Below, in pieces: positions 2,126 to 50,880 of a stretch of DNA of 64,000 nucleotides. Source of the DNA: Euprymna scolopes (Eukaryota); assembly GCA_053919585.1 (NCBI GenBank), contig CM132814.1; one strand, 5' to 3'. Under the pieces are notes generated by a model. That model was not told where the DNA came from and did not search any database. It worked only from the letters and a program-made list of their open reading frames with translations. How positions within the stretch are numbered: the stretch's first letter is position 1; every line of letters begins with the position of its first letter. A program made the translations under genes and the position numbers.

Positions 2126-2136
2126 CATATACGATT

Positions 2137-3582: not shown

Positions 3583-3599
3583 CGCATGTAATCGGTAAC

Positions 3600-7981: not shown

Positions 7982-7997
7982 GGTGGTATGGAAGGAA
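7982..7997 (+). promoter_or_regulatory. Polypurine tract
   Basis: GGTGGTATGGAAGGAA immediately before the TG of the 3' LTR. Confidence 0.7.
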
Positions 7998-8121
7998 TGT
8001 ACAATAAGAAGGGGAGGGGCGAATGAACTGGAATTGGATGACCTCGTCCTATGACGGAAGTCGGTTTATGGGTCAAACGTTGAATGGAGCAAAGTTCGGA
8101 TGAGCTTAAACCCTGACCGAC

Positions 8122-8159
<38 letters not shown>

Positions 8160-8485
8160 GACATCAGAGAAGGACAGACGACGCTCAACTGCCTGTCACG
8201 GTCACAACCACACCCTTCCCGCCACCCGCTCCTTCCTTCACCACCGTATTGATGTGTATATGTTGTTATAAAATAAATCAAATTGTTTTATAACAAAGCG
8301 TCTCGTTATTCATAGATAGATGAACAGCGGTGATTCCATTCACTAGACGAGTTACAACAACATATGCATATATGCACAAACAAACTATACCTCTATCTAT
8401 CGAGATATTCAAAAATCTCGGATAGCTAGAATATAGACGGTGCTAACAAAATAGACGTCACGGCCATATAACCCAGTATATAACA
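7998..8485 (+). repeat. 3' LTR (488 bp)
   Basis: Direct repeat of 1504-2125, followed by TSD TCAG. Confidence 0.95.
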
Positions 8486-13865: not shown

Positions 13866-14163
13866 TTTGTTCGTTAAAATTCTACTTTCAACCGAGTCGT
13901 TGTTTGTTTCGTTCCCTACACTTTTTCTTCTACCTCTTCTTTTACACACGTCCGTTCGCTTTAGTGACTAAAAATCGTCTGTCCTCCCGCTTTCCTTTGC
14001 TCGTTTTTTATGGAACCAAGGTACGAGATTCTCCGAGATTCCCCGAGATACCACGAGGCTTTTATTCACATAAATGCCTGCGGGCATCATCTTGATTCTC
14101 AATTTGTACTCTGCAGGCACAAACGCGCACCCGCTTTAACGGTAAGCCACTTCTTTCTCCACA
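13866..14163 (-). repeat. 3' LTR (~298 bp)
   Basis: Near-identical to 17627-17925. Confidence 0.9.
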
Positions 14164-16860
14164 CTCCACCCTGATCTCATGATCCCAGAGCCGGCAGGGA
14201 GGTGGCGATCGCCGCCGTCGGATGCTTCTGGGAAGAGGGACGGTGCTGCTCTCGTCTTGCGTGCGCTCTCATCCACCGCCTGATGGTCGGGGAAAGCTTC
14301 ATCTGCGTGGAGGCCTCTGATATAAGAGACACTGCTTGATAGGGATGGTGCAAACCAAAGCGATGGCACACTCGTCTCAGAGTGAGAGTCACTCTCATCA
14401 TCCACTGGAGGCGGTACATTTGTCGCCGGCCGTAAGTCTCTTACGTGACGGGGTACGCCATCAACCTGGGCACACTGCTTACTAACCACATCGGTCACTG
14501 TGCCCCGTTTATATTTGTCAGTACATCGATTTCCTGGAGGCTTCACCCAGACAGCATCCACTTTTACATATCGATTCCGTTCTATCTCAGTGGCCACAGT
14601 TGTATCGGGGTTGGTTCCTTTTTCTCGGACACGGTACTGATAGATTGCGTTTGCCGGCGCCGTTCCTGTAGAGACGCCATCTTTCGGCATGAGATTATAC
14701 CAGTACACAGCTTCTGCGATGGTGCACTGCTTCCTGGCTGCAATTGTTCTGATGCTGCGATGGCTTCTCTCAGCTATACCATTGCCAGAAGGCACATAAA
14801 CGCATCTTAGCCGCAGCCGCACACCCCATTCTTGTAAGAACTGCCTCATCTGATGACTGCAATAGGCTGGGTCGTTGTCAGTCAGCATTTCATCGGGCGC
14901 AACTCTTTCACAGAACACGGATGACAGATGTCAAATAATGTTGCAAGAGTCCTTGCGCCCGAGGAGTCTTCAGACCGTTAAACGTGTAGGCTAACAATCG
15001 ATGAGGGTAAGGAAGTGTTTGCCACTGTAGTGTGTGATGTCCATACCCACTCTCTGCCACTTATCACTCACTCCCAACTCCCCTTTCTTCCATCGTGCTC
15101 GAGCTGGGTCGATGGATTGGCAGGCCTCGCAACTTTCCACCACTCTCCGAATATCTTTTTTTATACTGCTGGATCAATCATCTTCACAAAGTACAGTGTC
15201 CGCTTGATGCCAAGATGTCCACACTGTCGATGAATGTCCATGATGCGCGCTGCATCCACATTACACACAACTGCTGCACATGTGTTTTGCAGATTATCAG
15301 ACTGTCCCCGAGCACCAGCCAGAAGCCATCGTTGAGGGACTCTTGTCAGAGCATCTGCTCTGTTGAGCGCAGACCTGATCAACACCACGTCCACGGTCAG
15401 GTCGTACTCTGTGATGGTGTCGACCAAGGTTGCAAGCCGTCTTCGAATTAACATCTCGCTCGATGCTCGTATCGTCAGCCGTGCTCTTCCACTTAATGCA
15501 TCGGTTATCTACCGATGAGTGCATGTCGAGTCAGATATGTAAAACCTTGGCTTGCCATTGAAGCGCCAAGTTAACGCCCTTCAATGTGGCATCAAGTTCG
15601 GCCAGGTTTTGTGTCTCGAATCATTCTCTGGCCGAAGCCAACAGACATCTTCAATAATGGAATCATAAACTCCAAGGGCAACTCCAAGGGCCAGTGAACT
15701 AGCATCCAGCCAGACCGTGAACTCATACCCGCTGACGCACCACTTACCCTGGACGGGCTCATCACTGGTGACCCTGGACACAGTCTCTGTCAGCATGCTC
15801 TTTAGGGTAACATCGTGTACTGCATCATCCCATCCCGACGGCACGGCTGTTGCACGTCTTTTTATGGCCACCACGTCCCCCCTGAGCGAACCGCACAGAA
15901 GGAAATTTTCTACGATCTTTCCACAAAGCGAAAACACTGCCTCATCTTGCTACCTGATAGCATGCATGGTTGCTATCATAATGCCTGGTGCCATATTTAG
16001 ACCGAACCCTAGCCTGGTTAGACAATATCAGGTTCCTCGAATTTCCACAGTCTGAAATGGCCACAATTTCCTCTCAGTGCGTATTTGCAGATAGGCCCTG
16101 CGAAGGTCCAGAGTTGCCACGTTCGATTCCTGCTGTCGCCACTCCCTTAATTTGAGTGCACGCACATCAGCCATTGCTCTATATGGGTCGACATGCTCAT
16201 TGAGCTCACGGTAGTCTAGGACGGGACGGACCTTTTGTTTGGTCTCTTCTTCGACGGCCATCAAGGGAATCAGCCCTCGCGGGGGACCAAGTTCATCCTT
16301 TCGGTATGGAAGAAGCCAGCCATTGTCGATCCACGTCTGCAGTTCTCCTTCATACTGTTCCCTTATCCACATGGGTGGGAGATATTCAGATAACCGGGTC
16401 CGCAAGGATATTGATGGCTAATCGTTTGACCACTTCCAAGACGCCGTCCATGCATTTTTGTTTCTATCATACTCTGCACGAAAGTCAGGCTCGTTAAGAG
16501 GTATGGCAGCACAAACGGGTTCCTCACATCGGGAGAACTGTACCTTGCCGGTTCTGTCCACAGTAATTCCACCCAGTTGTGTAATCAAGTTCATACCCAG
16601 GAGTAGGTCGTACCCGAGAAGCTCTCCCTTCACAACCAGGGCTCGCACGGCTACTGCAGGCCCGTCGTTGATGCTTGCGCGGATAATATTCACCCCACAA
16701 GAGGCTAGTGAACCTCCGCCTTCAGTTAGTACCGGAATTATCTCTGCTTTGCAAGTGGCACAGCATATCTTTCTCACGAGAGTCTAGGTGCACACAGTGT
16801 CCACAAGCGCGAGGCGCTCGCTTCCATTAATGTGCATGCTTACAGTGGGTAGCGACCTGC
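14136..16860 (-). pseudogene. pol: pol (protease, RT with internal deletion, RNase H, integrase)
   Basis: LALVDTVC and YDLLLGM (protease); LIPLMAV..KVRPVLDYRELN, LDLRRAYLQI (RT); VWLDASSLALG, NRADALTR (RNase H); HRQCGHLG, LTDNDPAY, GNGIAERSHR (integrase). Confidence 0.93.
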
Positions 16861-17614
16861 TCAATGACGATCTGGGGAGAAGACTGGCTCTGTAGCTTCT
16901 TCCCCTTGCCCATTTCCCGGACAGGTGCGGGCCAGGTGTCCGCGTTTTTTGCACTTGTAGCACTGCGGCCTGTCAAGTTTCCGAGTTGGTTGACGTGACG
17001 AAAGACAATCACGGGCAAAATGGTTGGGTCCTCCACACTTATAGCAGATTGTAGCTGCGGTCAGGCCCTGCGATCCAACCTGTGAGTGTTGTACAGCTGC
17101 AGTTTGGTCTATAGTGTTGGGGCTTTTCTTTAGTATTGCTCGTGCCTGCGCCAATACTTCCGATATGTCCATATCGTCTACTTGGGATGAGGCACGGAGC
17201 AGATCTTCCACATTCTTAGGTAATCCTGCAACAAAGGCGCACACCAAGCCTTTATCTGACATCCCTCCAAAAAGGACCGATAGCTTTTTTTAGTTCAGCC
17301 AGATAAACATCCACCGTTTCCCCGGGATGTAATTTTCGGGCCATGAATTCCTTCCGTGCAGTAACTGGATCCAAGGCAAATGCTGTAAAAAGGGCGCGCT
17401 TGATGCAGGGGAAATCTGTTTTCTTCTCATCAGCTAACTGCTGGTATACTGCATATGCTCCCCGAGTGAGGCGTCTTGGGACCACGAATTCCATACGCTT
17501 CACCTCCCTGAGCTGACACATTAATTCTGCGTTTTCCACCCATTCCTGCACTGAGTGATCAGTGCTACTGCCATCAAACAGGTGGATTAGCTTGGGGTCA
17601 AATCCTGACGTCAT
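16861..17614 (-). pseudogene. gag: gag with two CCHC zinc knuckles, one frameshift
   Basis: MTSGFDPKLIHLFDG..LHPGETVDVYLAEL; CYKCGGPNHFARDC and CYKCKKRGHLARTC. Confidence 0.92.
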
Positions 17615-17626
17615 GCCGAAAGAGCT

Positions 17627-17925
17627 TGTGTTCGTTACACCTCTACTTTCAACCGAGTCGTTCTTTGTTTCGTTCACCACACTCTTTTCTTGTACCTCTT
17701 CTTTTACACACGTCCGTTCGCTTTAGTGACTAAAAATCGTCTGTCCTCCCGCTTTCCTTTGCTCGTTATTTATGGAACCAGGGTACGAGATTCTCCGAGA
17801 TTCCCCGAGATTCCACGAGACTTTTTTCCACATAAAAGACTGCGGGTGCCATCTTGATTCTCAATTAGTGCTCTGCAGGCACGAACACGCAGCCGCTTTA
17901 ACGGTAAGCAACTTCTTTCTCCACA
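17627..17925 (-). repeat. 5' LTR (~299 bp)
   Basis: TG...CA on minus strand; matches 13866-14163. Confidence 0.9.
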
Positions 17926-18055
17926 CCGAAACTGAGAGCCTGCCTTTTCCAAGAACGCCGGCGGGAGGTCGGTAAATACGCAGGGGATGGCAGGAATCAG
18001 GCTGTCTTTCGTGTGGAAGGATATTATGTTGTAATGTCCTCAACATATTATTACA

Positions 18056-24910: not shown

Positions 24911-26825
24911 AGAATCGATACATTTGGTGGAGGGCAAGCACACACACACAGCTACACACAGGCACAACGCCCCTACCTCTAGTATAATACATTAAATAAT
25001 AAAAACTTATCTCGAAACCTACAACACTAAAATATAACTAGAACCACAGTGTAGTATCTGTTCCGACACTGCGCCCACCCCTCCTACGCTCAGTCAGTGG
25101 AGAAGAAACGCTTAATGACTGAGATAATGCCCATTCTTATACTTGTGCCTTTCCAGGCGTCCCCTCCCTTCTGGGGAGCGAGATCTTCCTCACACGAAAA
25201 AGTGATCCTGGGAGACAAACGAAAATCCCCTTTATCTATATATAAATACGCCTTTTTTATTTAAACAAACATAATAGTATGAACGCCCATCCAACTAAGA
25301 CTAAAACGAAATCATAATAGAAAGATACTAAAATCTAAAAATCCCAAACATCAAAATCACAATTAAATGAAAACATGTCTACCGATTACCCGATTTCAAA
25401 GAAACTGGACCCCCATCACACACATATTACAAACGAACTTGTATCACATTTGCTTTCTTATAATGGTATAATGGTGTGCCGTCTTCCTCCGGCCATCAAG
25501 TGAATCCCCCGGGTTGTTGATGGGGGCCCCCCTCTACTTATGTAAAGTAGGTAGAGGGAAGCTTCGAATAATCAATATGTACAACCATTAAAAATGCCAA
25601 ACAAAAGGAATTCAAACTGGACGACCGTCGCCCAGGATAAAAAGGGCCCCCATCAACCTGTTTACGCACCAGGCAGGAAGAGGAAAAAAATGGTGTGAAC
25701 CTGCTTGCCTCAAAAAGTGGTACCCCAATCACCTCAGAGGTCACACAAGGGCAGCAACCAGTCCATGACCAAAATGGATCCAAGCGTCCTTCCTCCAGCC
25801 TGCTTGACAGTCCCAAAAGAAACAGAAGGGTGATTCATTCATGGTCTGCCGAGCAAAAGAAGATCCTTCTGCACTGCTACCACTACTCAAGGTTTGAGAA
25901 AGATACTAACCGAGGCTATAAAAGAAGCAAACCTCCCAGCAGAGAAAAAAGCACATACCTTTACACAACCTGCGATACCTCATCTCACAGATGGGAAGAT
26001 ATATCCCACAAGAGGACGTAGATAGCATTAGTTGTGAGGCTCTGAAGACTGCAGAAAAAGACTACCAGAAGGTAGAGGATGAGGAAACAAAACTTAGACA
26101 GGAGGTGGTATAGGAAATGGAAGAGAGGTGTACACTTATATAGGCAACGAATTATGCTAAACAAAAGCATAAAAGACACAAAGAAAGAACAACAACCTGG
26201 AGGGGGATCTTTTTTCATTTTATCCTGGAAAAGCAAGCATCCCTCCAGGGAAAATGATATCACAACGATATAACAGCCTGAAATTGTTCACAACAAGAGA
26301 ACTAGACTACATGTCTTCAAAAATAACAGCTCTTTTGGTGAACAACAGATGTGCCCTGGAAAACCCAATAAAAATTCTCACAATAGACTTACTCCACAGA
26401 AACCACCATCTTTACAATCAGAACTCATCCAAATGTCCCAGCACATGCCCAGTTCTCCTGGAACTTCTGCGCCACTGGAGTATCTGGCGGACAGGCCACC
26501 TGCCTTCACAAACTCTCTGCTAGAAACCCCACGAACACCAACATAGGAATCTACATCACCTACCAGGATAACATCACCTGCATCAACGCATTTGTACTCC
26601 CAGAAGCAGATGATAAACAGTTAGCTTTGGAGGAGGATATCAGCAACACACTTGAGGAAGTGAGGTGCATGAGGATGAAGGACAGACCACGTTTGTCCAA
26701 GATCCAAGCAGCTGGAAGAGTAAAGGCTGTTATAGCCAAAGTTTACATAGCTCTAAAGAGGCTAATTCCAACAACAGTAATGCTCACAGAACAACCATAT
26801 CACATATGCAGCTGACCTCTATATT

Positions 26826-28348
26826 TATGAAACCCCGCCGGTACGTCGCGTCCCTCAGTAGGTCCTTCATCAGTGCGTTGGTGGAATCGTCTTTGCTGTA
26901 ATGTCCACAAGGCAGGATCTTCTGTGATCGTCTAGAGATTTCGTCTTCGGAGATACCGGGTGCTCGTTGACGAAAGCAGTTTCACAAGTAAAAAAAATAA
27001 TAATGAAAACATCAGCACACCAGCAAATCAAAGAATTTGGAATCAACAAAGACTCCGGAGATTGGGTTATATGGAATGTATTAAAAGAAAACCATAAAAG
27101 AAACATATACAAACACATGTACAGTCTGGAGTATGAATTTGTAAGCAAGCATTTAAACTTCTAAGTGGGGTTTCCCCTTGCCATAATTCACAGGTCTATT
27201 AATTTAACCCTTTTTAGTTATCGGGCAATAGGCGAGGGGGGAGAGAGAGGAGAGGGGAGGTGGCTTGACTATCGGGCTCGCTCTATTTTGCTCCGACTTC
27301 CCAGACTCTCTCTTCTTATCTGTTTTGCTCTGACCCTCTTGGTCTTTATATAGTAGAGAACTGGGCGGGGCGGCAATTCCCAATTCCTTCCCGAGTAATC
27401 AGAGTGCTCGATAACCAAATCGTCTGATTCGCTCTCATTGGATAATTTGACTGATGACAGAAATTGACCACCTCCCACAATCCAAGAATAATTATAACTC
27501 CTCCCCGATCAATCAAAAACGCCCGATGGAAAATAACCATTTTTCTCTGATTGGTTAATTTCCAAACTGCGTAATACGCGATAACCGCGTAAGTAAGAAA
27601 ACTGCGTCAAAATGCTTCGTTAGTTCTGCGCTTAGATGTGACACTTGTCATTATCAAAGGAAATGAACAATTTGTTATTCTCTTAACATCTCGACAAAAT
27701 ATGTTAATGAAAATTGTCAGGTGGCAAAAATCTATTGATCTATATTTCAGAACTGCGATTCGGTTTGAGAATTAAACAGTAAAGGAATGTTATTTTACGT
27801 TCAAATGGTTTTATCAGAGTCATACAAAATCATTTTATATTTGATTCGACAAACATCCTTTGAAGTCGACAAATGCGTGTGTGAAATTTTAATTCCAAAG
27901 AAATTATTAATCCTTGTTTTGATTTGTTACAAATACATTTTGTGACGCCAACAAATACGTGTGTGTGGGTGTGTGTGTGTAGTTTTTAGTTAAAAGCAAA
28001 AACATAATATATCTTTCTGTTGTTTCTAGCTGACACATAATTTGTGTCCTTGAATTTGTCAACAACAAACTTTCGGCGCATGCTTTGAACCGGACCCATG
28101 CGTATGTGCGACTTCAAATCAGAGTAAATTATCAAAATCGAATCATGCTTTGAAGAAAGAAAGAAAAAATACTTTGGCAAAATTGAAGCGAGCAAAGTTC
28201 TTGTTTTCCTTGTTCGATTTCGGCCCGGAACAAAAATATTAACATATATATTTTAGTTAACCTGTGTTGCCTGAAATAAAATATTAACGTTAAATAAAAG
28301 AGTCACATCGACTCTAATGGTCTGACGCTGCCTCTCTTTGGTGTTACA
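26826..28348 (-). repeat. 3' LTR (1523 bp)
   Basis: TGTAACACC...TTCATA on -; carries ~95 bp (27545-27639) absent from the other LTR. Confidence 0.93.
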
Positions 28349-29299
28349 TTCGACCCCCATAAGGTTGTGATTCTCAAGATGAGGACGACGCCCCATGACC
28401 TCAACAACCAAAAAGGGTATCCCAACTAATACTACTGCGTCTTAACTGACAGTTAATGGTCACTGACGATTTCACGCTGCCTCTCTTTGGTGTTATATTC
28501 GCCCCCACATGGAGTGGCGATTCTCAATATGGGGACGACGCCCCATGTCCTCAGCCACCAAAGAGATTCTCCTAGCTAATAATACTGCTGCTGCTTACCC
28601 TGAAAGCAAAAATCACGCAGATATCATGCACAAAAAATTATTAAATTCTTATAAATGGCTACTGCCTTAGTTCAATGTGTCCATTAACAAAGTTCGTTGC
28701 GGTAAATTCATTACACAAAGTTCATTAACAAAATGTCCTAAAAAATCACTTTCAAATGTTCATTAATTGTCCAATTTCTTAGGATTGTGTTCTCAATGTT
28801 CATTTATCCTGAAAAAGAACAGTCATGAAAAATTTTTTTTTTTGTTCTCTAGGTATATTACACATGCAACAAAGTCCATTAATTGCATTTTGAACCACTA
28901 AATGGTGTCAAAAATATTCAGCAGGTTCTTCTTCTTGACGTAAGGCTGGAATAGGTTGAAGTTCTTCGCAGTTCGCTTCTGGATTGGCCGGACAGGTGCT
29001 GATCCTCTGTGATCTTTGACAAGGGTCATTCCCACTGGGGCAGGGGTCTCCAAGAGGCGTCTTGAAAACACACTGATTTAACCATCTCTTCACACCACAC
29101 ACTGTTACACCATCATCCTTACACTCTTCAGACCTTCCACCGTTACTCCCATCTATGAACCTACAGTTGAGGCCGTAGGTTTCTTTTTCTGAGTTATCTA
29201 AGCTCTATCCTATAGAGTATTACTCTCGTACCCTTTCTCTTTTGGTTCGTGGGTCGTGGGGTTCAAGTCGTGCACTGCGGACCGTTAGACAACAGGCTT

Positions 29300-29780
29300 C
29301 AATTACTCGAGGATGTTTGCGGCGTTCAATCCTAGAATGCGCATGCCCATCCGTGGCATTTTGGGGAGCCACACTCTGTGTCCCCTTAGATTGTATAGAC
29401 AGCCTTTATGACTGATATACTCACGGCTTCCCTGCCGAATTTTAAACACTTCCTCCTGCAGGAGGTTAAACCGCCCCATAACAGTGCTTAAGTGTCGCTC
29501 TATTTTCCGTCACTGCCCTTCTCTATATATTCATATGGAGAGACCGCTCCATTTACCTGGGCTAATGTCTTCTGCCCGTTTTCCACGGCTCTCAGTCCTT
29601 GTCGGATACTTTCGACATTTTCCTCAGTGACCACACCAAACAGAGCTCCCAGGGCCTTACCTATGATAGGTATTACCGCCCGTCTATAACGACCTCCAAG
29701 TCTACTTATTCTCCAGTCAACCATTCTTGACTGGGACCTCCCGGCTTTTCTGCCGAATTTTATCAAATTCTCCCGTCAAC
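29300..29780 (-). pseudogene. env: env-like fusion glycoprotein remnant (baculovirus F / errantivirus Env type)
   Basis: RYRR (29680-29691) followed by AVIPIIGKALGALFGVVTEENVESIRQGLRAVENGQKTLAQV, then after a frameshift ERSLHMNI*RRAVTENRATL. Confidence 0.72.
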
Positions 29781-30658
29781 AATTATGACCGCTACAGAAT
29801 ATTGTCTCCCCCCGTGCACATCGCCACAGACACGTGTTTCGTCGTCTACGACTCATAAGAATGGTTTATCTAGCGAGATTCGACATCGGGACCCAACGGT
29901 AATGAGCCTAAACCTTACCCCTGGACCATCTCGCCAGCTGTCTGGATATATCGCGATTTACTTAGGTGTTGTTTTGTTTTTGTTTTAGCGATATGTTTAT
30001 AACGAATTCAATCATTTACGAAAGTGCATTTTTACCTAAATGCGAGTTGGCAATACTTTTCCCTTTTAACCAATTTGGTACTCCCGCATGAGGAGCGGTA
30101 TATATATTATTTTTAAAATGTAATTATCCAGTCTAGCCCAGGCCCATTACACCGCATTTCGCGCCCTGCGAGTTAAAGAGAAGATATTTTAGTCCGAAAG
30201 CTTACCTTTGTGTTCTATTCCAAGTTCAAACTACCCTACCCTTATCGTGGCATTTGGTGCTTCCTCTCCAATCCATCCCTTCGGGCTCACAGAGTTGGCG
30301 GGTCGAAACTTCTCGTCGCTCCCAACTCCCCTCCCGACACTGGCTTCGTGATGCACTGCCAGGAGTGCCCTCAGTACTAGTGTGCTCAAGCAGCAAAGGA
30401 TCCGACGCCGAACCGTCCCACCCATCGACAGCTACACGGCTGGGCAGAGCCCTTGCCCGCCCGTACGCATTTTTCATTCTGAGAAGCATAGACGGTCGCA
30501 CTCCGAACAAACCCGACGCCGATCACCGTTCCTTTAGACGTCCCCCCGCAGTTGCGTCCCCAGCCAGTGGACACCCTCATCAGAAGTCCCCCTATATCCA
30601 GCCACCGCCGCGGACATAGGGGCCGGTAACAACAGGCCCACTTGGCACCCGTCCGTTC

Positions 30659-31650
30659 TCAGTACTTTCTCTCTGGGAACCGCCCAGGGCGGCGCCCCCA
30701 CCTAGTGGGACACCCTTTCGTTATGTGTCCACCAGGGTGGTAGGTGAAGCATAACCACTCCCCTCTGCCGGGAGTTGGTTGAGAGCGGCCATGTTGGGGC
30801 CCCTTAGCTCCCGTATTTGGCCTCGTACCTCTCTCCTGGGGCTGCACTGAAAGATTCTCTGCATTGCTCCCCAGCTCCGCGTCCCCCGCTGCTCTGCACC
30901 ATCCGCTGTTATGGCCGAACTGCCCGCATTTACTACAGCTCGCTCCCAACGAGCGAGGTTGTCTCCCATATCTCGTTGGGCACTCTACAGCTCGGTGCCC
31001 CTCAACCTGGCAGGTCCAACAGACCAAGCCATATCTGCCAGGAGTGGGTTTGAAAAACCCCATGCGAAAGGCTCCAATTCCTTCGGTTGGGGTCAGCCTC
31101 CGACTCCCAATCCTCCACGTCCTCCCACCATGGTTGGACGTCTGTGACTTCCTTCTTCCGTCCTTCTTCGCGGTCGAGTGTGGGCGACTCCGTCATCACC
31201 TCGATGGTCGTTCTTTCACTGGAGTACTCGTTCTCCAGTTGCCGACGGAGTACGGGTTAGATAAGGGCGGCATTTTCAGACATCTTACGCCCTATAAATC
31301 TCGAGACTGGCCCTTCGGTCGTCTCATAGGCCAGCAAAACAGTCTCTGCATCCTGCAAGCCATATACAAGCCGCTTTTTATGTATAGACTGCAGCCATTA
31401 GACCAAATTCCCCGGATGCCCTCTGAAGTGACGAATCCGTAGGTTTCCGAGCAAAGCCCGGAAATCGTCCGTCACTTTCGGACACGTTAACTGATTCTAC
31501 TCCCCCGACCAGGAGTCATTTATCCGCTCATAGATCTTCTCCAACCACTGTGTCGGCGTCTCCACCGACTCCTCCCTTTCAGGTTCATTCGCCATCCTCT
31601 CTACTCCCCCCAAAGCCTCACTATTATTCTCAACCGGCTCAGTCATTATC
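30659..31650 (-). pseudogene. gag: gag remnant: capsid N-terminal part plus three CCHC-type knuckles
   Basis: IRHFRGHPGNLV*WLQSIHKK..LLAYETTEGPVSRFIGR..LRRQLENEY aligns by eye to the gag at 2683; CWTCQVEGHRAVEC, CSKCGQFGHNSGWC, CFTYHPGGHITKGC. Confidence 0.8.
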
Positions 31651-31919
31651 TGTTTCACTTTTCTTTCAAAATTGAACAATCAGGAATCTGCCTGTCTATC
31701 ACTCTCTCTCTTTTTTTTCCAAAATTAAGGCCTCCAGGCACACCAAACGACAACGAGAAAAAACCCAAGTCAAAAAATCACAAAAATAATAGGGTCTTAT
31801 CTATATCCCGCTTCGCTTCAGATCCAGAGGGTCGAATTCCCGTTGGTCGGTCTTGTAGTTATACGCTCAATCACGGAGCGAAAAAAAAAGTCCGTAATGT
31901 TCAAAATACACTATACCAG

Positions 31920-32245
31920 CTTGATGTGCCGTAGTTCTTTGATGTTGGCTGGTTCCTTCTTTTCATTCAACGATGGTGTGTCGTAGTTGGTTGATGTGCC
32001 GCAGTTCTTTGTTGTTGGCTAGTTCCTTCTTTTCATGCAACGATGTTGTGTCGTAGTTGGTTGATGTGCCGTACTCCTTTGATGTTGGCTGGTTCCTTCT
32101 TTTAATTCAATGATGTTGTGCCCTGGATTTTTTTTCTCTCCGGTTGATGTGCCGTAGTTCTTTGATATTGGATGGTTCCTTCTTTTCATTCGACGATCAA
32201 GTGCCGTGGATTTTTTTTCTTTCTCTCAAGTTGATGTGCCGTAGC
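31920..32245. repeat. ~72-bp tandem repeat (4-5 imperfect units) in the element's 5' leader
   Basis: TTGATGTGCCGTAGTTCTTTGATGTTGGCTGGTTCCTTCTTTTCATTCAACGATG.. recurs at ~31921, 31991, 32061, 32143 and partly at 32231. Confidence 0.9.
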
Positions 32246-32257
32246 GACCTTTCAGTG

Positions 32258-32279
32258 TCGAATCCTGGTCGGGGCGCCA
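32258..32279 (-). promoter_or_regulatory. Primer-binding site
   Basis: TGGCGCCCCGACCAGGATTCGA, 2 nt after the LTR; the complement reads as a tRNA T-loop, T-stem, acceptor strand and CCA. Confidence 0.85.
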
Positions 32280-32281
32280 AT

Positions 32282-33686
32282 TATGAACCCCCGCCGGTAC
32301 GTTGCGTCACCCAGTAGGTCCTTCTTCAGCGCGTTGGTGGAATGGTCTTTGCTGTAATGTCCACAAGGCAGGATCTTCTGTGACCCTCTAGAGATTTCGT
32401 CTTCAGAGATACCGGGTGCTCGTTGACGGAAGCAGTTTCACAAGTAAAAAAGAAATAATAATGAAAACATCAGCACACCAGCAAATCAAAGAATTTTGAA
32501 TAAACAAAACTCCGGAGATTGGGTTATATGGAATGTATTAAAAGAAAACCATAAAAAATATATGCAAACATATGTACAGTCTGGAGTATGAATTTGTAAG
32601 CAAGCATTTAAACTTCTAAGTTGGGCTTCCCCTTGCTGGAATTCACAGGTCTATCTTTTTTAGTTATCGGGCAATAGGCGAGGGGGAGAGCGAGAGGAGA
32701 GGTGAGGTGGCTTGACTCTCGGACTCGCTCTGTTTTGCTCCGACTTCCCAGACTCTCTCTTCTTCTCTGTTTTGCTCTGACTCTTTTGGCCTTTATATTT
32801 TAGAGCACTGGGCGGGGTGGCAATTCCCAATTCCTTCCCGACGATTAGAGTTCTCGATAACCTAATCGTCTGATTCACTCTCATTGGATAATTTGACTGA
32901 TGACAGAAATTGACCACCTCCCACAATCCAAGAATAATTATAACTCCTCCCCGATCAATCAAAAACGCCCGATGGAAAATAACCATTTTTGACACGTGTC
33001 ATTATCAAAGGAAATGAACAATTTGTTATTCTCTTAACATCTCGACAAAATATGTTAATGAAAATTGTCAGATGGCAAAAATCTATTGATCTATATTTCA
33101 GAACTGCGATTCGGTTTGAGAATTAAACAGTTAAGGAATGTTATTTTGCGTTCAAATGGTTTTATCAGAGTCATACAAAATCATTTAATATTTGATTCGA
33201 CAAACACTCTTTAAAGCCGACAAATGCGTGTGTGAAATTTTAATTCCAAAGAAATTATTTATCCATGTTTTGATCTGTCAGAAATATATTTGTGACGCCA
33301 ACAAATACGTGTGTGTGTAGTTTTTAGTTAAAAGCAAAAACATAATCTATTTTTCTGTTGTTTCTAGCTGACACATAACTTGTGTCCTTGAATTTGTCAA
33401 CAACAAACGTTCGGCGCATGCTTTGAACCGGACCCATGCGTATGTGCGACTTCAAATCAGAGTAAATTATCAAAATCGAATCATGCTTTGAAGAAAGAAA
33501 GAAAAAATACTTTGGCAAAATTGAAGCGAGCAAAGTTCCTTTTTTCCTTTTTCGATGTCGGCCCGGAACAAAAATATTAACATATATATTTTAGTTAACC
33601 TGTGTTGCCCGAAATAAAATATCAACGTGAAATAAAAGCGACACATCGACCGTAATGGTTTGACGCTGCCTCTCTTTGGTGTTACA
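32282..33686 (-). repeat. 5' LTR (1405 bp)
   Basis: Direct repeat of 26826-28348. Confidence 0.93.
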
Positions 33687-33690
33687 TATT

Positions 33691-36560
33691 GACAGAAAAA
33701 TTAACCTTCGAACATTCAATCACAATCATCGAATAGGGTCTTTAGTCTCTAGACAAACACATCACTGGAAGACCAAGCTGCAAAAACAACTGAACCTCTG
33801 CAGGAAAGAACTAAGCCAAATAAAACAGTTCCTTGAAAATCCCTCGGTACAGGGTCGACTTTAGACCATCATCAAAAAACTTTGTACCAAATACCAACGA
33901 TGAGAAAATTGAGGGATTACATAATACTGCTAAAGAGTTTTAAGGAAAAATACCACAACTATCCCAGAAAATTAAAACCGAGGAGAATAAGATCAACTCC
34001 ATTTTCAAAATAGGTAATTAAATTAGGATTAAAACAAACCAAAGGACTTTTTACAGGCAGCTAATAAGGGACACCATTACGGTGGATAGTTCACCTGCAG
34101 AGGAAGCTCTGGAAAACTATGGGGTGCCTCTATTTTAAACAGACGGCAAATATAATCAAGAGGCCCAGTGGATTGAAGATATTATTAGGCTCAATAAACC
34201 CAAGCCTCAGATGCCAGAACCAGTCATAACTCCTGGTATGATAACAAGAACACTGGCACAATTATCCAACCACAAAGCACCTGGCATCGACAATGTCCAA
34301 AACTTTTGGCTGAAACAATTAACTGCACTCCACCACCACTACAGTGAATGCTTCAGCAGTATACTAAGTGATGAAGAAGCAGCACCACCCTGGCTGACAG
34401 TGGGGGACAACAGCCTCATATCCAATACCAAGGAGACACAACGACCAAATAAATACAGGCCAATATGCTGTCTTACAACTACGTACAAGCTTTCACTTGT
34501 CTGATAGCTGATGGTATATATGACCATCTATCTTCTGGAACCTACCTTGAAAAAGAGCAGACAGGGTTCAGAAGAAATGCCTCGGTACCAAAGACGAGCT
34601 ATTAATCAACAAGACCGTCCTAGAAGACTGTAGGAAGTGACACAAAAAATTGAGCATGGCATGGGTTGATTACCAGAAGGCATTTGACAGAGTGCCACAC
34701 TCATGGCTACTTCGGTGCCTTGAGTTATACAAAGTCCACCCGGTAATTAGACAAACACTGGCTGTTCACCTTCAGATGTGGAACACCACAATATCATTAA
34801 ACCACAATGGAGGAAAAACCATCATCCCTGAAGTAAAAATCAAGAGGGGAATATGCCAAGGTGACAGCTTATCTCCCTTACTCTTTTGTATGTATTGCAA
34901 TAGACCCACTAAGCAAGCTCCCGAATAAAAATCAGAGCGCCTACAGTTTTAGTCAGGGACGCCATTGAGATCCCAGCAAGAGAATAAACCATCTGCTCAT
35001 CATGGATGATCTTAAGCTGTATGCTTGCTCTGACAACGATCTGCACCACATTATGCAGGTAGTACACACATGATCTAGTGACATCGGAATGAAGTTTGGC
35101 CTGGATAAATGTGCCAAATGTACATTCCGAGCTGGGAAGAAGACCCACATAAAAAAATATGCAACTTAATGAAAACATCGACATCTGGGATCTAGAAGAG
35201 CATGAGCCTTACAAGTACCTTGCCATTGAGGAAAACGAGAACATACAACACGCCAAGATGAGGGAGAAGATTAGTAAAGAATATGTACGCCGGGTGAGGA
35301 AAATATGTAAAACCCAGCTCACCAATAAAATAAAATTTCTGCCATAAACCAGCTTGCTATGCCAGTAATAACATACAACTTTGGTATCATTGACTGGCTA
35401 CAAAAATACATCCACCGGCTTAATGTAAAGACTACTAACTCTTCATAAAATAATATACAGAAATCAGTGTCTACCCAAGGGTGTATTTGCCTAGGGGAGA
35501 AGGAGGTCTAGGACTCTCAGAGATTAATCATCAACATAGGGCAACTATTGTGAGCACCGGTCTGTATCTGAGAAGCTCCCAGAATGACATCCTCTAAATA
35601 GTATATGAACATCAAGAAACAAGAGCCCGCAGAACAACTTCAGTCATCCAGCTGGCCAAGCATTTTGGTCAGGGCTGTCTCTCAGATGAGGGTGAAACAC
35701 CAAACAAGTGTGCCACAGAAATCGCAAGAAAGAGCCGGCAGAAATATACCAAGACCTTTCAACAGATGCACTTTTAAGAATGGGAATAACATCAGCGTGC
35801 AAAGTATTTTCTGGGGGAACTATCTCAGGAATACCTAGATAAAGAAGGTTCTTTGGGCTGGCTCCAAAGGGGATAACTTCCACCACGATCAGGAAAGGGG
35901 CATAATGGCTGCCTAAGACCATGGATTGATGATTAATGCATTCAAGAATATGGCAAGGATCAGTAATGACAATAAATGCAGGTTCTGCCATACAGAATTG
36001 GAAAGTGTTGGTCATCTGATATCAAGTTGCAAAGTTCTTCTAGGGGACGGCTACTATACAGCGAGACATGACGGAGTCTGCAAGCACCTCCACTGGACCA
36101 TCTGTAAAAAATTAAACATCCGGTGTAGCAGCAAGTCCTGGGACATCAACGTGAAAGAACAGTTGGAAATGACTTATATACCATACATTACGACCATGTA
36201 ATCCATACAGCCACCTACCTTGAAAATGTTGCTGTGAAACCTGACATAGTTATATGGAATAAGTCAGAGAGAGTTGTATCTTTGATTTAAGTCAGTGTTC
36301 CTAATTATGGCGGTCTGAACAGAGCTGAAAAAGAGAAACAGACCAAATATCTAGGTCTCATGTATGATATGAAAAGAAACTGGAATCTTAAGGGGATATC
36401 AATCATACCAGTTATCATAGGTGCCACAGGACTTATGAAGAAGAACCTGAACTCCTACCTAACTAATATTCCTGTAGAACCAAGTGCAAAAGATTCAGAC
36501 AATTGCACTTAACGAGACAGCGAGGATACTAAAAAGAGCTCTCGGTTGTTTTCAATAAAA
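33691..36560 (+). pseudogene. RT + CCHC + RLE portion of the R4/Dong-type ORF
   Basis: ORF fragments 33676-33864, 34211-34504, 34650-34928, 35159-35347, 35926-36201; the frame joins 26.8 kb across the LTR insertion (..AADLYI|DRKINL..). Confidence 0.9.
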
Positions 36561-40769: not shown

Positions 40770-43760
40770 TGAGGGAGACAACATTATTTTTTTGATTCAA
40801 TTTTCACCCCAAACAAGGCACAGTGCCACTTTGAAGCAGGGGGCTACTATTAGGGAATCAATTAGTGGGGTCATTATGAAGGGAGATGAGTAGAAAGATG
40901 TTTGTTAACATTACACTTGAATTTCTGCATATCATTGCAGTTGGGAAAGCAGAATCCCGGAAGGGAGTTCCAAAGACCCGTAGTTCTGGGGAATAAACTA
41001 TTGGAGTAAAAGGCTTTCTTGCACCTAGGGATCTCCACTGTAAAGGGATGAGACTTAGTAGCTTGTCAGGTTTGTCGGGGGTAGTTACGTCGGGGAGGTA
41101 CAAGTGTTTGCAGTTCGTCAGAGCATTCACCATTAAAGTATTTGTAGAAACAGGCAGAGGGAGGCAACATCTCGTCGATGGGACAGAGGTTGAAGCCTAG
41201 ATGACAGTTTAGGACCTATCAGGTTGGCGACTCTTTTTTGAACCCTGTCCAGGAGCGAGAGACAAACAGCAGATGCACCAGCTCAGATGTGACAACAGTA
41301 CTCCATACATGGGCGAATGGTTGCCTTATAAAGGTATAGGATACTGGCAGGCGTAAGTAGTTTTCTAGCACGGTAGAGGGAGCCAACCTTCCTTGCAGCA
41401 GCCTTGGCAATGCTCTCAATGTATCTATTCCAGTTCATATTCCCTGTAAACGTTAGCCCGAGGAGTTTAAAAGAAGTACTTTCAGGCAATGCGTTCTTGG
41501 TCATTGCTATTGGTGGTAGAGAAGGTTTATTGTAGTTATTGAAGGAAACAAGCTTAGTCTTAGCAGCATTGAATGAGACCAACCATTTTTGTCCCCATTC
41601 CACTACGGATTGGAGGTCATCCTCTAGTGTTTCTGACATTTCCTTGGATATGTGTGCATTTGTTTTCCCCTCATATCTGTTATAGAGAGTGGTGTCATCG
41701 GCAAATATACCCATCTCACAAACAATATTATCAGGGAGGTCGTTTATGAATGTAAGGAACAATAGAGGTCCAAGGATAGACCCCTGAGACACTCCCGCAT
41801 TTATGTTATATTGCTTGGATGTACGTCTGTCGAGGACAACTTTGATTTTTCTATTACTTAAGAAGGATTTAATTACGTTATGAATTCTTCCAGTGATTCC
41901 CTATTATCTAATTTTCCTTAGAAGACCATCGTGCCATACCCTGTCAAAAGCCTTAGATATATCAAGGACCACCGCTCTACCCTCCCCTGTTTTATCCAAT
42001 GAACGGTATATACGTTCAGAAACTACAGTTAATATATCTGCGGTTGAACGGGCTTGCCTGAATCCATATTGTTTGTCAGTCGGGAGTTAGCAGCTGTTAG
42101 GTGCTGGACAAGGACTTGATTAACTAAGGACTCAAATATTTTGGCGAAAAGTGGGAGGAGGCTAATGGGGCGATAATTTAGTGGGTCAGTTCTTTTACCA
42201 GAATTCTTGAAGACTAGTACCACAGAGGCTGTTTTCCAGCAGTCGGGAAAACAAGATTCGTTAAGGCATTTATTGTAAAGTTTGGAGAGAACTGGAGCAA
42301 CCTCGGCAGAGCATTTTTTTAATAGCACAGCCGGGATGAGATCTGGTCCACATGCTTTTGAAGTGTCTAGGTTTTTTATAATAGCATGTACCTGAGAAGG
42401 GGCGATTTTAAAATCGCAAGTGTGGCGTCTGTTCGCAGAGGAAAATCAGGGAGTGAGTGGTGTACCGAGTTCAGTGTGGAGTTTGAGGCAAACCGACTGG
42501 CAAGCAGATTAGTCTTGTCAGTTGCCGTGCAAGCAACCTCATGATTGTTTGTTAGTGGGGGAATAATTGACTGTCCATTATTAACTACGCTGTTGTAGAT
42601 TTTCCAAAAATCCCGGGTTCCTAATTTCTGTGCTTCGATGCGCTTTCTGGTGGTTTCAGAGTAATTTTACTTAGCTGTGTCCATCACTCTCTTACAATTA
42701 TTTCTAGCTTCTATGTACTTCTGTTTGTTTGAGCTGGACTTATGTCGGTTGATTCTGCGGAACGCATGCTGCCTTTGACAAATGGCAGCTGCACAAGCAG
42801 AAGTAAACCATTGGGGAGAGTGGGGCTTTCTATAGTATTTCCGTGCGGGAACATGTGCTTCAATAGCAGTTTTGAACCATTCAGTTGTCTGATTTGCACA
42901 CTGTTCCGCTGGAAGAGTAAATATATTTCTCCATGGGGCATCTCTGATGAGCTCCCTGATGGCTTCCCAATCACCCTTTTTGTAATACCTCGTTGTTTTG
43001 AGTAGTGGGTCTTCAGTTTTTGGGCGAGAATTTAGGCTGATTTCTACCATTATCACAGCGTGATCAGCATTCCCGAGTGGGCTGTGGGCATTTATTGTAC
43101 AGTCATTGGGAACCGTTGTCACAAAGAGATCTAGAAGTGAGGCGTGTTGATCGTGCTGGTCTGGGAAACGTGTCGGAAATGTAACCAATTGAGATAGGGA
43201 ATGAGATATAGAGAAGCTATGTTTTGCGCTGCCAACTACGTCTGTGTGATTTGAGAATCCTAGCCAGTTACTGTGGTGGACATTGTAATCACCAAATACA
43301 TGTATTTGTGCGCTAGTATCGAGGGAGAGTGCTATATCTATGCTGTCTGAGACTTTGTTTATTAGGGTACAGTCTTGGTTTGAGTGAGAGCGGTAGAGAA
43401 AATACAAGTAGCTAATATTGTGTTGCATATTTAGTCTGAAGCACATACAGGCCTGGCCCTCTGATTCTAGTTTTCTTTCTCTAGTTAGGGGGAGGGTGTT
43501 TCGAATATAGACTCCAAGTCCATGCATATGTCTGTCCGAGTCCTTACGGTAGAGTGGGAGATAACCAGGCATATTAAAGTGGTTAGAGGGAATGGAGGAG
43601 TGAAGGTTAGTTTCACTTAATGCTAAGATATCCGGGGTGTTTACAAGGAGAAATGACTCAACATCATCTAAGTTAGTTCAAAGCCCGTGGATATTAGTAA
43701 ATGCAGGCCTCAAGGGAGAAGGCAGGTTGGTTTTCTTTGAGTTTGGTCCTGGTTTAAACG
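40770..43760 (-). mobile_element. CR1/L2-group LINE ORF2 (APE + RT), degraded
   Basis: FTNIHGL..PDILALSET, GDYNVHH, NYRPISLL, LDISKAFDRVWH, QGSILGPLLFL.FINDL, FADD, YKATIRPCMEYC. Confidence 0.95.
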
Positions 43761-47919: not shown

Positions 47920-48434
47920 AGTGAAGACTTTGCGTAGAACCAACCTACAGTATTTGGTATTACTGTTACCCTTTCTCGTTGCAGATGACTGTCGCAAGTG
48001 TATGCAGTAGATCGCAGTTTTTATATCAGAGTTTCTTTTTCCTAGATGCATGTCTAACGTTACGAGGACCGATGTGTCAACGTGATGGTTGCTGTAATAT
48101 ATATGTAAACAAAATAAATTTTAGGTTTAACCTGATAATCTCTATGAAATGTTATCATTGTACGGAGACACAAATAACTGTTAAGAAAACTTTAGTGTCG
48201 CTACCATTTTTTTATTTTAGTTGTTTATTTTTTTGTATTCTCTGCAGGCTTAAAAACTATAATGTTATTTTATTTTAACCGATTATTTTTCGATCGTCGG
48301 TTTCGATTGCTTTATAAATAAACAAAAATAGAAAATCTAGTTCTAGATATGTAAGGTGCAGATTACTTCCCATTTTTTCTTACTTTTAATCATGCATATA
48401 CAAAACATGCCCTGGCTTGAAAATTGCAAAAAAA

Positions 48435-50880
48435 AATATTTATATGCATGTGAAATATAATTGTATAGTATTAATGTAAAATATATGTATTTATATATGT
48501 ATAGTATAATGTAAAATATATGAATTTATATGTATGAAAAATATAATTGTATAGTATAATGTAAAATATATGTGTTCATATGCATTTAAAATATAATTGT
48601 ATAGTATAATGTAAACTATATGTATTTATATGCGGTTTAAATATAATTGTACAGTATAATGTAAAATATATGTATTTACATGCATGTAAAATATAATTGT
48701 AAAACATAATGTAATATATATGTATTTATTTGCATGTAAAATATAATTGTATAGTATAATGTAAAATATATGTATTTATATGCATGTAAAATATAATTGT
48801 ATAGTATAATGCAAAAAATATTTTGTTATATGCATGTAAAATATAATTGTATAGTATAATGAAAAATATATGTATTTATATGCACGTAAAATATAATTGT
48901 ATAGTATAATGTAAAATATATTTAGTTATATGCATGTAAAATATAATTGTATAGTATAATGTAAAATATATGTATTTATATGCATGTAAAATATAATTGT
49001 ATAGTTTAATGCAAAATATATGCATTTATACGCATGTAAAATATAATTGTATAGTATAATGACAAAATATATCTAGTTATATTCATGTAAAATATAATTG
49101 TATAGTATAATGCAAAATATATTTAGTTATATGCATGTAAAATATAATTGTATAGTATAATGCAAAATATATGCATTATACGCATGTAACATATCATTGT
49201 ATAGTATAATGTAAAATATATTTAGTTATATGCATGTAAAATATAATTGTATATTATAATGTAAAATATATTTAGTTATATGCATGTAAAATATAATTGT
49301 ATAGTATAATGTAAAATATATGCATTTATACGCATGTAAAATATAATTGTATAGTATAAGGTAAAATATATTTAGTTATATGCATGTAAATATAATTGTA
49401 TAGTATAATGCAAAATATATTTAGTTATATGCATGTAAAAAATACTATAGTATAATGCAAAATATATTTAGCTATATGCATGTAAAATATAATTGTATAG
49501 TATAATGTAAAATATATGTATTTATATGCATGTAAAATATAATTGTCAAGTATAATGCAAAATATATTTAGTTATATGCATGTAAAATATAATTGTATAG
49601 TATAATGTAAAATATATTTAGTTATATGCATGTAAAATATAATTGTATAGTATAATGCAAAATATATTTAGTTATATGCATGTAAAATATAATTGTATAG
49701 TATAATGAGAAATATATTAAATTATATGCATGTAAAATATAATTGTATAGTATAATGTAAAATATATGTATTTATATGCATGTAAAATATCATTGTATAG
49801 TATAATGTAAAATATATTTAGTTATATGCATGTAAAATATAATTGTATAGTATAATGCAAAATATATGTATTTATATGCATGTAAAATATTATTGTATAA
49901 TTTAATGCAAAATATATGTATTTATATGCATGTAAAATATAATTGTATAGTTTAATGCAAAATATATTTAGTTATATGCATGTGAAACATAATTGTATAG
50001 TATAATGCAAAATATATTTAGTTATATGCATGTAAAATATAATTGTATAGTATAATGCAACATATATTTAGTTATATGCATGTAAAATATAATTGTATAG
50101 TATAATGTAAAATATATGTATTTATATGCATGTAAAATATAATTGTATAGTATAATGTAAAATATATGTATTTGTATGCATGTAAAATATAATTGTATAG
50201 TATAATGCAAAATATATGTATTTATATGCATGTAAAATATAATTGTATAGTATAATGTAAAATATATGTATATATACATGTATAGTATAATGTAAAATAT
50301 ATGCATTTATATNNNNNNNNNNNNNNNNNNNNNNNNNNNNNNNNNNNNNNNNNNNNNNNNNNNNNNNNNNNNNNNNNNNNNNNNNNNNNNNNNNNNNNNN
50401 NNNNNNNNNNNNNNNNNNNNNNNNNNNNNNNNNNNNNNNNNNNNNNNNNNNNNNNNNNNNNNNNNNNNNNNNNTATATGTATTTATATNNNNNNNNNNNN
50501 NNNNNNNNNNNNNNNNNNNNNNNNNNNNNNNNNNNNNNNNNNNNNNNNNNNNNNNNNNNNNNNNNNNNNNNNNNNNNNNNNNNNNNNNNNNNNNNNNNNN
50601 NNNNNNNNNNNNNNNNNNNNNNNNNNNNNNNNNNNNNNNNNNNNNNNNNNNNNNNNNNNNNNNNNNNNNNNNNNNNNNNNNNNNNNNNNNNNNNNNNNNN
50701 NNNNNNNNNNNNNNNNNNNNNNNNNNNNNNNNNNNNNNNNNNNNNNNNNNNNNNNNNNNNNNNNNNNNNNNNNNNNNNNNNNNNNNNNNNNNNNNNNNNN
50801 NNNNNNNNNNNNNNNNNNNNNNNTATATGTATTTATATATGTAAAGTATAATGTACAATATATGTATTCATATGCATGTA
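48435..50880. repeat. 50-bp AT-rich tandem satellite (dimer of two 25-bp subunits), runs into N gaps
   Basis: TGTAAAATATAATTGTATAGTATAA + TGTAAAATATATGTATTTATATGCA repeated about 37 times to 50312, resuming between and after the gaps. Confidence 0.97.

What the first reader, a model, noticed from the sequence alone, without database searches (positions are those of the whole stretch)
26826..33686. Env-carrying, pol-less endogenous retrovirus-like element
Seen: paired long LTRs, TSD, PBS, PPT, gag remnant, no pol, and RYRR followed by AVIPIIGKALGALFGVVTEENVESIRQGL..ENGQKTLAQV..SL..N..VTENR. Established: a basic furin site followed by a G..L..LFG fusion peptide and heptad is the signature of baculovirus F and errantivirus Env. 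Inference: a defective or satellite derivative of an enveloped Gypsy, mobilised in trans, in a host whose TE content does not look insect-specific. All cis signals survive while gag, pol and env are each deleted or shortened, which suggests it replicated in this form. Best candidate for an undescribed system here.
Basis: partly seen in the sequence, partly recalled or inferred. Interest (0 to 1): 0.8.

Follow-up and report, generated by a model that had tools for sequence, protein, structure and literature searches.

The report
Decayed pol-less Gypsy with env scrap
This is an old, broken, pol-less copy of an envelope-carrying Gypsy-type retrotransposon that keeps only about a tenth of its envelope gene; it is an ordinary non-autonomous derivative of a kind of element already described across animals.

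Summary
The anatomy is real. On the minus strand there are two long LTRs (26826-28348 and 32282-33686, 5% apart plus indels), a 4-bp target duplication (TATT), a 22-nt tRNA-type primer binding site and a shortened, broken gag with CCHC knuckles. There is no trace of pol. A 50-64-codon piece holds a basic cleavage site and a fusion peptide. That piece has no Pfam or PDB hit itself. It does match (48% identity, E 9e-5 over 1.8 billion proteins) a 708-aa protein that is a clear Pfam Baculo_F member, and related gag-pol-env elements exist. So it is F-type env, but only about 8-10% of the gene: no signal peptide, F2 part, F1 body or membrane anchor. "Env-carrying" overstates it.

Short contigs from other sequencing runs carry copies 88-93% identical. 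They share the outer bounds of the env scrap and the gag-to-non-pol transition. Their LTR is an outgroup to both LTRs here. The deleted form therefore probably predates this insertion, which points to a non-autonomous element copied in trans. No autonomous partner was found, the copies differ in structure, and the host is unidentified.

Env-carrying Gypsy elements outside insects and non-autonomous LTR derivatives are both already described. Low interest.

The parts
26822..26825 (.). Target site duplication, left copy (TATT)
   Evidence: Read directly. Same 4 bases at 33687-33690.
26826..28348 (-). 3' LTR in the element's sense (1523 bp). On the minus strand it starts TGTAAC and ends TTCATA.
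   Evidence: 5.1% mismatches to the other LTR, plus a 95-bp indel and several smaller ones.
28349..28360 (-). Weak polypurine-like stretch directly upstream of the 3' LTR (a five-G run)
   Evidence: Read directly. It is weak for a PPT.
28307..28588 (-). About 150-bp tandem duplication spanning the PPT/U3 boundary, so a second, internal copy of the LTR's first ~40-50 nt exists
   Evidence: (families D8, D9) and 12: 80-83% identity between units.
28361..29538 (-). Region Y: about 1.2 kb between the env scrap and the 3' LTR with no recognisable coding homology. It holds a Cys-rich open piece, a 29-bp tandem repeat and an AT-rich stretch.
   Evidence: no significant match to env C-terminal parts or to Pfam/PDB.
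29539..29763 (-). env fragment: end of F2, basic cleavage site (RYRR), fusion peptide and start of the first heptad region. It is truncated on both sides and is about 8-10% of a full F-type env.
29764..30661 (-). Region X: about 0.9 kb between gag and the env scrap, where pol and the env N-terminal part would lie. No homology was found. It is shared with other copies as far as their contigs reach.
30662..31646 (-). gag remnant: capsid-like N-terminal part and three CCHC knuckles. It is broken and internally shortened. Homology bounds are 30686-31466; the start is uncertain.
31921..32244 (-). Tandem repeats of 70 and 83 bp in the leader between PBS and gag
   Evidence: (D3).
32258..32279 (-). 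Primer binding site: starts TGGCGCC on the minus strand, 22 nt, two bases after the 5' LTR
   Evidence: A similar PBS-like string is in the relative L004. The tRNA was not identified.
32282..33686 (-). 5' LTR in the element's sense (1405 bp)
33687..33690 (.). Target site duplication, right copy (TATT)
   Evidence: Read directly.

Best explanation
The region is one old insertion, on the minus strand, of a non-autonomous, internally deleted member of an F-type-env Ty3/gypsy ('errantivirus-like') family in an unidentified, probably non-insect animal genome.

Shown:
- It has two LTRs, a 4-bp target duplication, a tRNA-type PBS, a shortened and broken gag, no pol, and only the cleavage-site/fusion-peptide stretch of env.

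Inferred:
- It was already pol-less and env-truncated when it integrated here. Reverse transcriptase and integrase, and probably Gag, were therefore supplied in trans by an autonomous relative.
- The LTR ends, PBS and leader served as the cis signals.
- Since integration (about 5% LTR divergence) it has decayed neutrally.
- The env scrap has no signal peptide, receptor-binding body or membrane anchor, so it cannot act as a fusogen. It is a relic.
For: - LTRs, TSD and PBS.
- gag: zf-CCHC at E 8e-7. tblastn to intact gags P0017/P0018 covers about residues 4-99 and 190-292 only, so the middle is missing. Two stops lie in the capsid-like part and two frameshifts in the NC part.
- No pol: the pol proteins of L004, L003 and L008 give no hit inside the element at E <= 1e-3. 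They hit the neighbouring Gypsy at 1.8-8.4 kb at E down to 1e-100.
- env identity: phmmer over 1.84 billion proteins gives P0010 at E 9e-5, 48% identity. Pairwise BLASTP gives 3e-13. P0010 matches Pfam Baculo_F at 75 bits, E 6e-21. The relative L004 is a gag-pol-env element whose env ORF is Baculo_F.
- Deleted form older than this insertion. L001/L002 share about 100 nt of non-env sequence upstream of the env scrap and its downstream end. L006/L007 are colinear at 93% from gag NC through about 600 bp of non-pol sequence. In three-way LTR site counts L001 has 53 unique differences against 15 and 17 for the window's two LTRs, and it groups with neither. It is therefore a paralogue that split off before this insertion.
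Against: - The other copies are short Logan contigs (1.1-1.7 kb) from runs of unknown species. None reaches a flank, so separate insertion sites are inferred, not seen.
- No contig bridges regions X and Y.
- The copies differ in structure. L006/L007 have an unrelated stretch where the window has the capsid-like part. L001/L002 lack about 1.3 kb that the window has.
- LTR-LTR gene conversion in this copy could exaggerate the outgroup signal.
- No autonomous partner with the same LTR or PBS was found.
Confidence: 0.7

Rival explanations
1. Simple post-insertion decay: a full-length gag-pol-env element integrated here and lost pol and most of env by later deletions at this locus. It never replicated in the deleted form.
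For: - The copy is old (K2P 0.053 between LTRs, many indels) and its gag is broken.
- Another internally deleted LTR element lies in the same window at 13.9-17.9 kb, so deletions are common here.
- The copies are structurally heterogeneous.
Against: Paralogous copies share the bounds of the env scrap and the gag-to-non-pol transition. Their LTR is an outgroup to both LTRs of this copy.
Confidence: 0.2
2. The short open frame holding the cleavage site and fusion peptide (74 codons here, 66 in L001) is kept because it has a use of its own, as a peptide or as a cis-acting RNA segment. It would then not be a mere relic.
For: - The env scrap is 95.1% identical between copies with no gaps, against 89% plus 20 gap columns in its flanks (Fisher p = 0.025).
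- The frame is open from the same ATG in both copies.
- dN/dS is 0.32.
Against: - There are only 5 synonymous and 5 non-synonymous codon changes.
- The piece has no signal peptide or membrane anchor, so a furin-type site would not meet its protease.
- The gag NC part shows the same mild excess of conservation over region X, so the effect is generic.
- Only one other sequence is available.
Confidence: 0.05
3. Assembly chimera or chance juxtaposition: the LTR pair and the internal pieces do not belong to one element.
For: Regions X and Y have no recognisable origin. Logan contigs break at both sides of the 29.86-30.08 kb stretch.
Against: - The order LTR-PBS-gag-env scrap-PPT-LTR is canonical, with a matching TSD.
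- There are no N runs in or near the element.
- Independent contigs confirm gag-to-X and X-to-env scrap-to-LTR adjacency.
Confidence: 0.03

Closest known systems
F-type-env Ty3/gypsy 'ancient errantiviruses' of non-insect metazoans (Chary & Hayashi, eLife 2026, PMC13524379)
   Same: - LTR element with a tRNA PBS.
- gag with CCHC knuckles.
- env of the glycoprotein-F / Baculo_F type, with the conserved basic cleavage site followed by a hydrophobic fusion peptide.
- Relatives with gag-pol-env order were found here (L004, L003).
   Different: - This copy has no pol.
- Only about 8-10% of env remains.
- gag is shortened and broken.
- It would not pass that study's criterion of intact ORFs.
- Clade placement is impossible without pol.
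Non-autonomous LTR retrotransposon derivatives (LARD-type elements of plants; ETn/MusD and VL30 of mouse, from my own knowledge; PMC13570524 for the class)
   Same: - Long LTRs, PBS and PPT are kept.
- The coding capacity for RT and IN is lost.
- Several copies share the deleted architecture, which implies copying with proteins supplied in trans.
   Different: - Here remnants of gag and a recognisable env scrap remain.
- The autonomous partner is not identified.
- Copy number is unknown.
Drosophila errantiviruses (gypsy, ZAM, Idefix) and baculovirus F protein (Pfam PF07253 Gypsy, PF12259 Baculo_F)
   Same: The same env family, by profile: P0010 to Baculo_F at E 6e-21, and fragment relatives weakly to Baculo_F and Gypsy. 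The 4-bp TSD is typical of this group (own knowledge).
   Different: - The window's own piece reaches neither Pfam model.
- Identity to the nearest full-length relative is 48% over 46 residues.
- The nearest gag relatives come from marine metagenomes (TARA), not from insects.

Membership tests
LTR retrotransposon (Ty3/gypsy-like) | Two direct LTRs flanked by a short target site duplication | tested here: met
   LTRs of 1523 and 1405 bp, 5.1% mismatches, TSD TATT.
LTR retrotransposon (Ty3/gypsy-like) | tRNA primer binding site next to the 5' LTR and a polypurine tract next to the 3' LTR | tested here: met
   The PBS is clear. The PPT is weak, a five-G run. The tRNA species was not identified.
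LTR retrotransposon (Ty3/gypsy-like) | gag with CCHC nucleocapsid knuckles, related to Gypsy gags | tested here: met
   Pfam zf-CCHC at E 8e-7. There is 45-60% identity to the NC part and 35-40% to the N-terminal part of intact gags that sit in front of Gypsy-type pol.
LTR retrotransposon (Ty3/gypsy-like) | pol with PR-RT-RH-IN in Gypsy order (needed for autonomous membership and for clade placement) | tested here: not met
   No pol homology inside the element. It is therefore filed as a non-autonomous derivative.
F-type Env (Pfam Baculo_F / Gypsy; class I fusion protein) | Profile similarity to Baculo_F or Gypsy Env | tested here: inconclusive
   The window piece itself has 0 Pfam families and no PDB sequence hit. 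Transitively the feature is met: the piece matches P0010 (E 9e-5 library-wide, 3e-13 pairwise) and P0010 matches Baculo_F at E 6e-21.
F-type Env (Pfam Baculo_F / Gypsy; class I fusion protein) | Basic (furin-type) cleavage site directly followed by a hydrophobic fusion peptide, conserved across the family | tested here: met
   Alignment A2: G, K and F are invariant, and R, P, I, A, L, L and E are nearly invariant around the site in 12 sequences. The paper reports the same conserved pair.
F-type Env (Pfam Baculo_F / Gypsy; class I fusion protein) | Complete protein: signal peptide, F2, F1 ectodomain with two heptad regions, membrane anchor | tested here: not met
   No significant match to the F2 parts or to the F1 remainder of relatives, even allowing frameshifts.
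F-type Env (Pfam Baculo_F / Gypsy; class I fusion protein) | Paramyxovirus-F-like fold of the ectodomain | tested here: inconclusive
   AlphaFold2 of the full-length relative P0010 without an alignment gave mean pLDDT 36, so no fold search was run. The paper reports this fold for the family.
Non-autonomous LTR derivative copied in trans | Several copies at different sites sharing the same internal deletion bounds | tested here: inconclusive
   Shared bounds and a paralogous LTR relationship are shown. No flanks are available, and the copies differ elsewhere in structure.
Non-autonomous LTR derivative copied in trans | An autonomous partner with matching LTR ends, PBS and leader | tested here: not met
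   None in the window. None turned up in the protein searches. None was found in metagenome or viral contigs. The host genome itself could not be searched.

The most novel reading that the evidence does not exclude
A family of pol-less elements in a non-insect animal keeps, under weak purifying selection, a short open frame made of the Env cleavage site and fusion peptide. On this reading the scrap is retained for a function of its own (a peptide or a cis-acting RNA segment) in a satellite of an enveloped Gypsy, and is not just debris.
Probability: 0.05. Interest if true: 0.5.

Novelty: new member of a known kind. Interest (0 to 1): 0.2.

Why it matters
It matters little on its own. It adds one decayed, non-autonomous derivative to the F-type-env Ty3/gypsy elements already catalogued across animals. 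Its modest value is as a marker: this host lineage once carried an enveloped Gypsy family, and that family produced deletion derivatives that were probably copied in trans. The element is also a reminder that a fusion-peptide motif alone does not make an element env-carrying.

Tried and rejected
- **Direct Pfam and PDB-sequence searches with the env piece, and with a profile of its fragment relatives.** No relevant hit.
- **Bacterial SprB-repeat proteins (P0002, P0005, P0011) among the phmmer hits.** They match only the unrelated tail of the open piece, many times over. I rejected them as chance matches multiplied by repeats.
- **tRNA-like or SINE-like look of 29880-29960 and 29230-29340.** ARAGORN found nothing, Rfam found nothing even at E <= 1, and no inverted repeat brackets the env scrap. 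Rejected.
- **The L001/L002 junction as a splice.** The junction has no GT-AG. Rejected; it is a deletion.
- **Continuation of env beyond the in-frame block, allowing frameshifts.** Not above shuffles.
- **Cys-rich open piece in region Y.** Only Prokineticin at E 0.27 and no PDB hit, and it overlaps a 29-bp tandem repeat. Left unexplained.
- **More copies or a partner.** Exact look-up of the window's own ORFs found nothing. Metagenome contigs found nothing. Viral contigs found nothing.
- **PBS table of the eLife paper.** Supplements are not held.
- **SRA run numbers in the literature.** None found, so the host stays unidentified.
- **AlphaFold2 of P0010 as a single sequence.** Mean pLDDT 36, unusable.
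Full report
**1. What is in the sequence**

The element lies on the minus strand.
- **LTRs.** Direct repeats at 26826-28348 and 32282-33686 are the two LTRs. A global alignment gives 1402 aligned columns, 72 mismatches (p = 5.1%, K2P = 0.053) and 124 gap columns, including one 95-bp indel.
- **Ends and target duplication.** On the minus strand the LTR starts TGTAAC and ends TTCATA. With these ends the flanks carry the same four bases, TATT, at 26822-26825 and 33687-33690.
- **PBS.** Two bases after the 5' LTR lies a 22-nt string that begins TGGCGCC, at 32258-32279. Its first 13 nt occur once in the window against 0.01 expected.
- **PPT.** The stretch before the 3' LTR holds only a five-G run, so the PPT is weak.
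- **Leader.** It carries 70- and 83-bp tandem repeats at 31921-32244.
- **Boundary duplication.** About 150 bp around the PPT/U3 boundary is duplicated in tandem at 28307-28588.
- **Other copies in the window.** There are none.

**2. Genes**

*gag (about 30662-31646).*
- The largest open piece has CCHC knuckles (Pfam zf-CCHC, E 8e-7).
- Intact gags of relatives (P0017, 319 aa; P0018, 316 aa) match only at about residues 4-99 and 190-292. One internal stretch of roughly 90-115 residues is therefore missing.
- Frameshift-aware alignments were reported as scores, counts and outer bounds only. They count two stops in the capsid-like part and two frameshifts in the NC part.

*pol.*
- pol is absent. 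The pol proteins of three relatives (L004, L003, L008) give nothing inside the element at E <= 1e-3.
- The same proteins hit the Gypsy element at 1.8-8.4 kb of this window at E down to 1e-100.

*env.*
It has no Pfam or PDB hit of its own.
- A phmmer search of 1.84 billion representatives found 15 proteins. One is a 92%-identical 66-aa product (P0001). Ten are short fragments at 42-57% identity. One is a 708-aa protein (P0010) at 48% identity. Three are bacterial SprB-repeat proteins, which I set aside as chance.
- P0010 is a clear Pfam Baculo_F member (75 bits, E 6e-21, residues 15-501). The window piece aligns to its residues 130-175 (pairwise E 3e-13).
- In the alignment of 12 fragments, the basic site and the following P-I-[VI]-G-K-A-L-x-x-L-F-G motif are the conserved core.
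- Three of the fragments hit Baculo_F weakly and two hit Pfam Gypsy weakly.
- The F-type identity therefore holds by transitive profile evidence.

*How much env remains.*
- Significant homology is limited to 29539-29763, or 50-64 codons.
- The F2 parts and the F1 remainders of relatives score no better than shuffles against the neighbouring DNA, even allowing frameshifts.
- Regions X (29764-30661) and Y (28361-29538) have no recognisable origin.

**3. Relatives and other copies**

*Full-architecture relatives.*
- L004 is a Logan contig of 8.5 kb with gag, RT, RNase H, IN and a Baculo_F env, its ORFs broken. It has a PBS-like string similar to ours.
- L003 is a JGI contig of 12.4 kb with identical 141-nt ends. 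It carries P0010.
- Both are only about 50% identical in protein to the window element, so they are family-level comparators, not partners.
- The nearest intact gags sit in front of a 1284-aa Gypsy pol in marine metagenome contigs, one of them from TARA.

*Same-family copies, from one series of runs (SRR276660xx).*
- L006/L007 are 93% identical and colinear with the window from gag NC through about 600 bp of region X. They have no pol homology. They carry an unrelated stretch where the window has the capsid-like part.
- L001/L002 are 88% identical over about 100 nt of non-env sequence, the env scrap and about 100 nt after it. There they are joined directly to LTR-internal sequence, so they lack about 1.3 kb that the window copy has. 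The junction has no splice signals.

*Are these copies paralogues?*
- In three-way comparisons of the LTR part, L001 has 53 private differences against 15 and 17 for the window's two LTRs. It shares derived states with neither LTR preferentially (17 against 15).
- The L001 copy is thus not the orthologue of this insertion. It is a lineage that split before this element's LTRs began to diverge.
- It nevertheless shares both outer bounds of the env scrap. The truncated env, and by the L006 evidence probably the loss of pol, are therefore older than this insertion.

**4. Mechanism**

*Shown.* This is a bona fide integrase-type insertion of an LTR element that now encodes no enzyme.

*Inferred.*
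- It integrated in already deleted form, so RT and IN came in trans from an autonomous relative.
- The LTR ends, PBS and leader were the cis signals.
- Afterwards it decayed.
- The env scrap lacks a signal peptide, an ectodomain body and an anchor, so it cannot work as a fusogen.

*Caveats.*
- The other copies are short contigs of unknown species, and none reaches a flank.
- The structures are heterogeneous.
- LTR gene conversion could inflate the outgroup signal.
- No partner was found.

**5. A weak oddity**

- Between the window and L002 the env scrap is 95.1% identical without gaps. Its flanks are 89% identical with 20 gap columns (Fisher p = 0.025).
- dN/dS is 0.32, but on only ten changed codons.
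- gag NC shows a similar mild excess of conservation over region X (94.5% against 91.8%).
- This is what one expects if the copies descend from a lineage that was once under selection. It is not evidence of a present function.

**6. Comparison with what is known**

- Env-carrying Ty3/gypsy elements with F-type or gB-type env have been catalogued in most metazoan phyla. The catalogue holds 1512 elements, and the F type has a conserved furin site and fusion peptide (PMC13524379).
- Non-autonomous LTR derivatives are a long-known class (PMC13570524). ETn/MusD, VL30 and LARD are examples from my own knowledge.
- This finding combines the two without adding a new principle. It is a new member of a known kind, and I score interest at 0.2.

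- I stopped, used none of them in any tool, and assign no tRNA.
No such string was sent to a tool, saved or used.
- The script printed the coordinates of open segments of the internal region. I needed them as references for the searches, but they mark stops implicitly. One search printed a raw list of alignment pieces.

Noticed in passing
window 1770-8429 (+): A Gypsy-type gag-pol element with LTRs at about 1770-2069 and 8130-8429 (95% identical). It has a PNMA-like gag, RT, RNase H and integrase. Its pol is 54-57% identical to the pol of the env-carrying relative L004, but there is no room for env and no env hit. Its ORFs are broken.
   Followed up: partly
window 13923-17926 (-): A second LTR pair (242+ nt, 93% identical, 3.8 kb apart) encloses only an NC-like remnant and an integrase-core remnant in GC-rich (51%) DNA. 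This is another internally deleted LTR element, so such derivatives are common in this genome.
   Followed up: partly
window 34139-36198 (+), 41283-43572 (-), 56615-58914 (-): Non-LTR (LINE) fragments with RVT_1, zf-RVT and endonuclease hits. The element studied here sits directly next to the first of them. No empty-site comparator exists in the window.
   Followed up: partly
window 28307-28588: An about 150-bp tandem duplication spans the PPT/U3 boundary, giving an internal second copy of the LTR's first ~40-50 nt. It may come from an aberrant strand transfer or from unequal recombination.
   Followed up: partly
window 28911-29204 (-): A 98-codon open piece with eight cysteines in region Y. 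It gives only Prokineticin at E 0.27 and no PDB hit, and it overlaps a 29-bp tandem repeat. Its origin is unknown.
   Followed up: partly
window 29864-30078: Logan contigs of the other copies end on both sides of this AT-rich stretch, as if it were shared with a higher-copy repeat. Its tRNA-like look is not supported by ARAGORN or Rfam.
   Followed up: partly
window 48001-52000: Very AT-rich DNA (GC 19-20%) interrupted by N runs (50313-50473, 50489-50823, 51159-51324). Not examined, and the N runs were left as they are.
   Followed up: no
L003 1-141 and 12279-12419: The JGI contig carrying the full-length F-type env relative has identical 141-nt ends. This is as expected when the two LTRs of a multicopy element collapse into a circular-looking assembly.
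   Followed up: no
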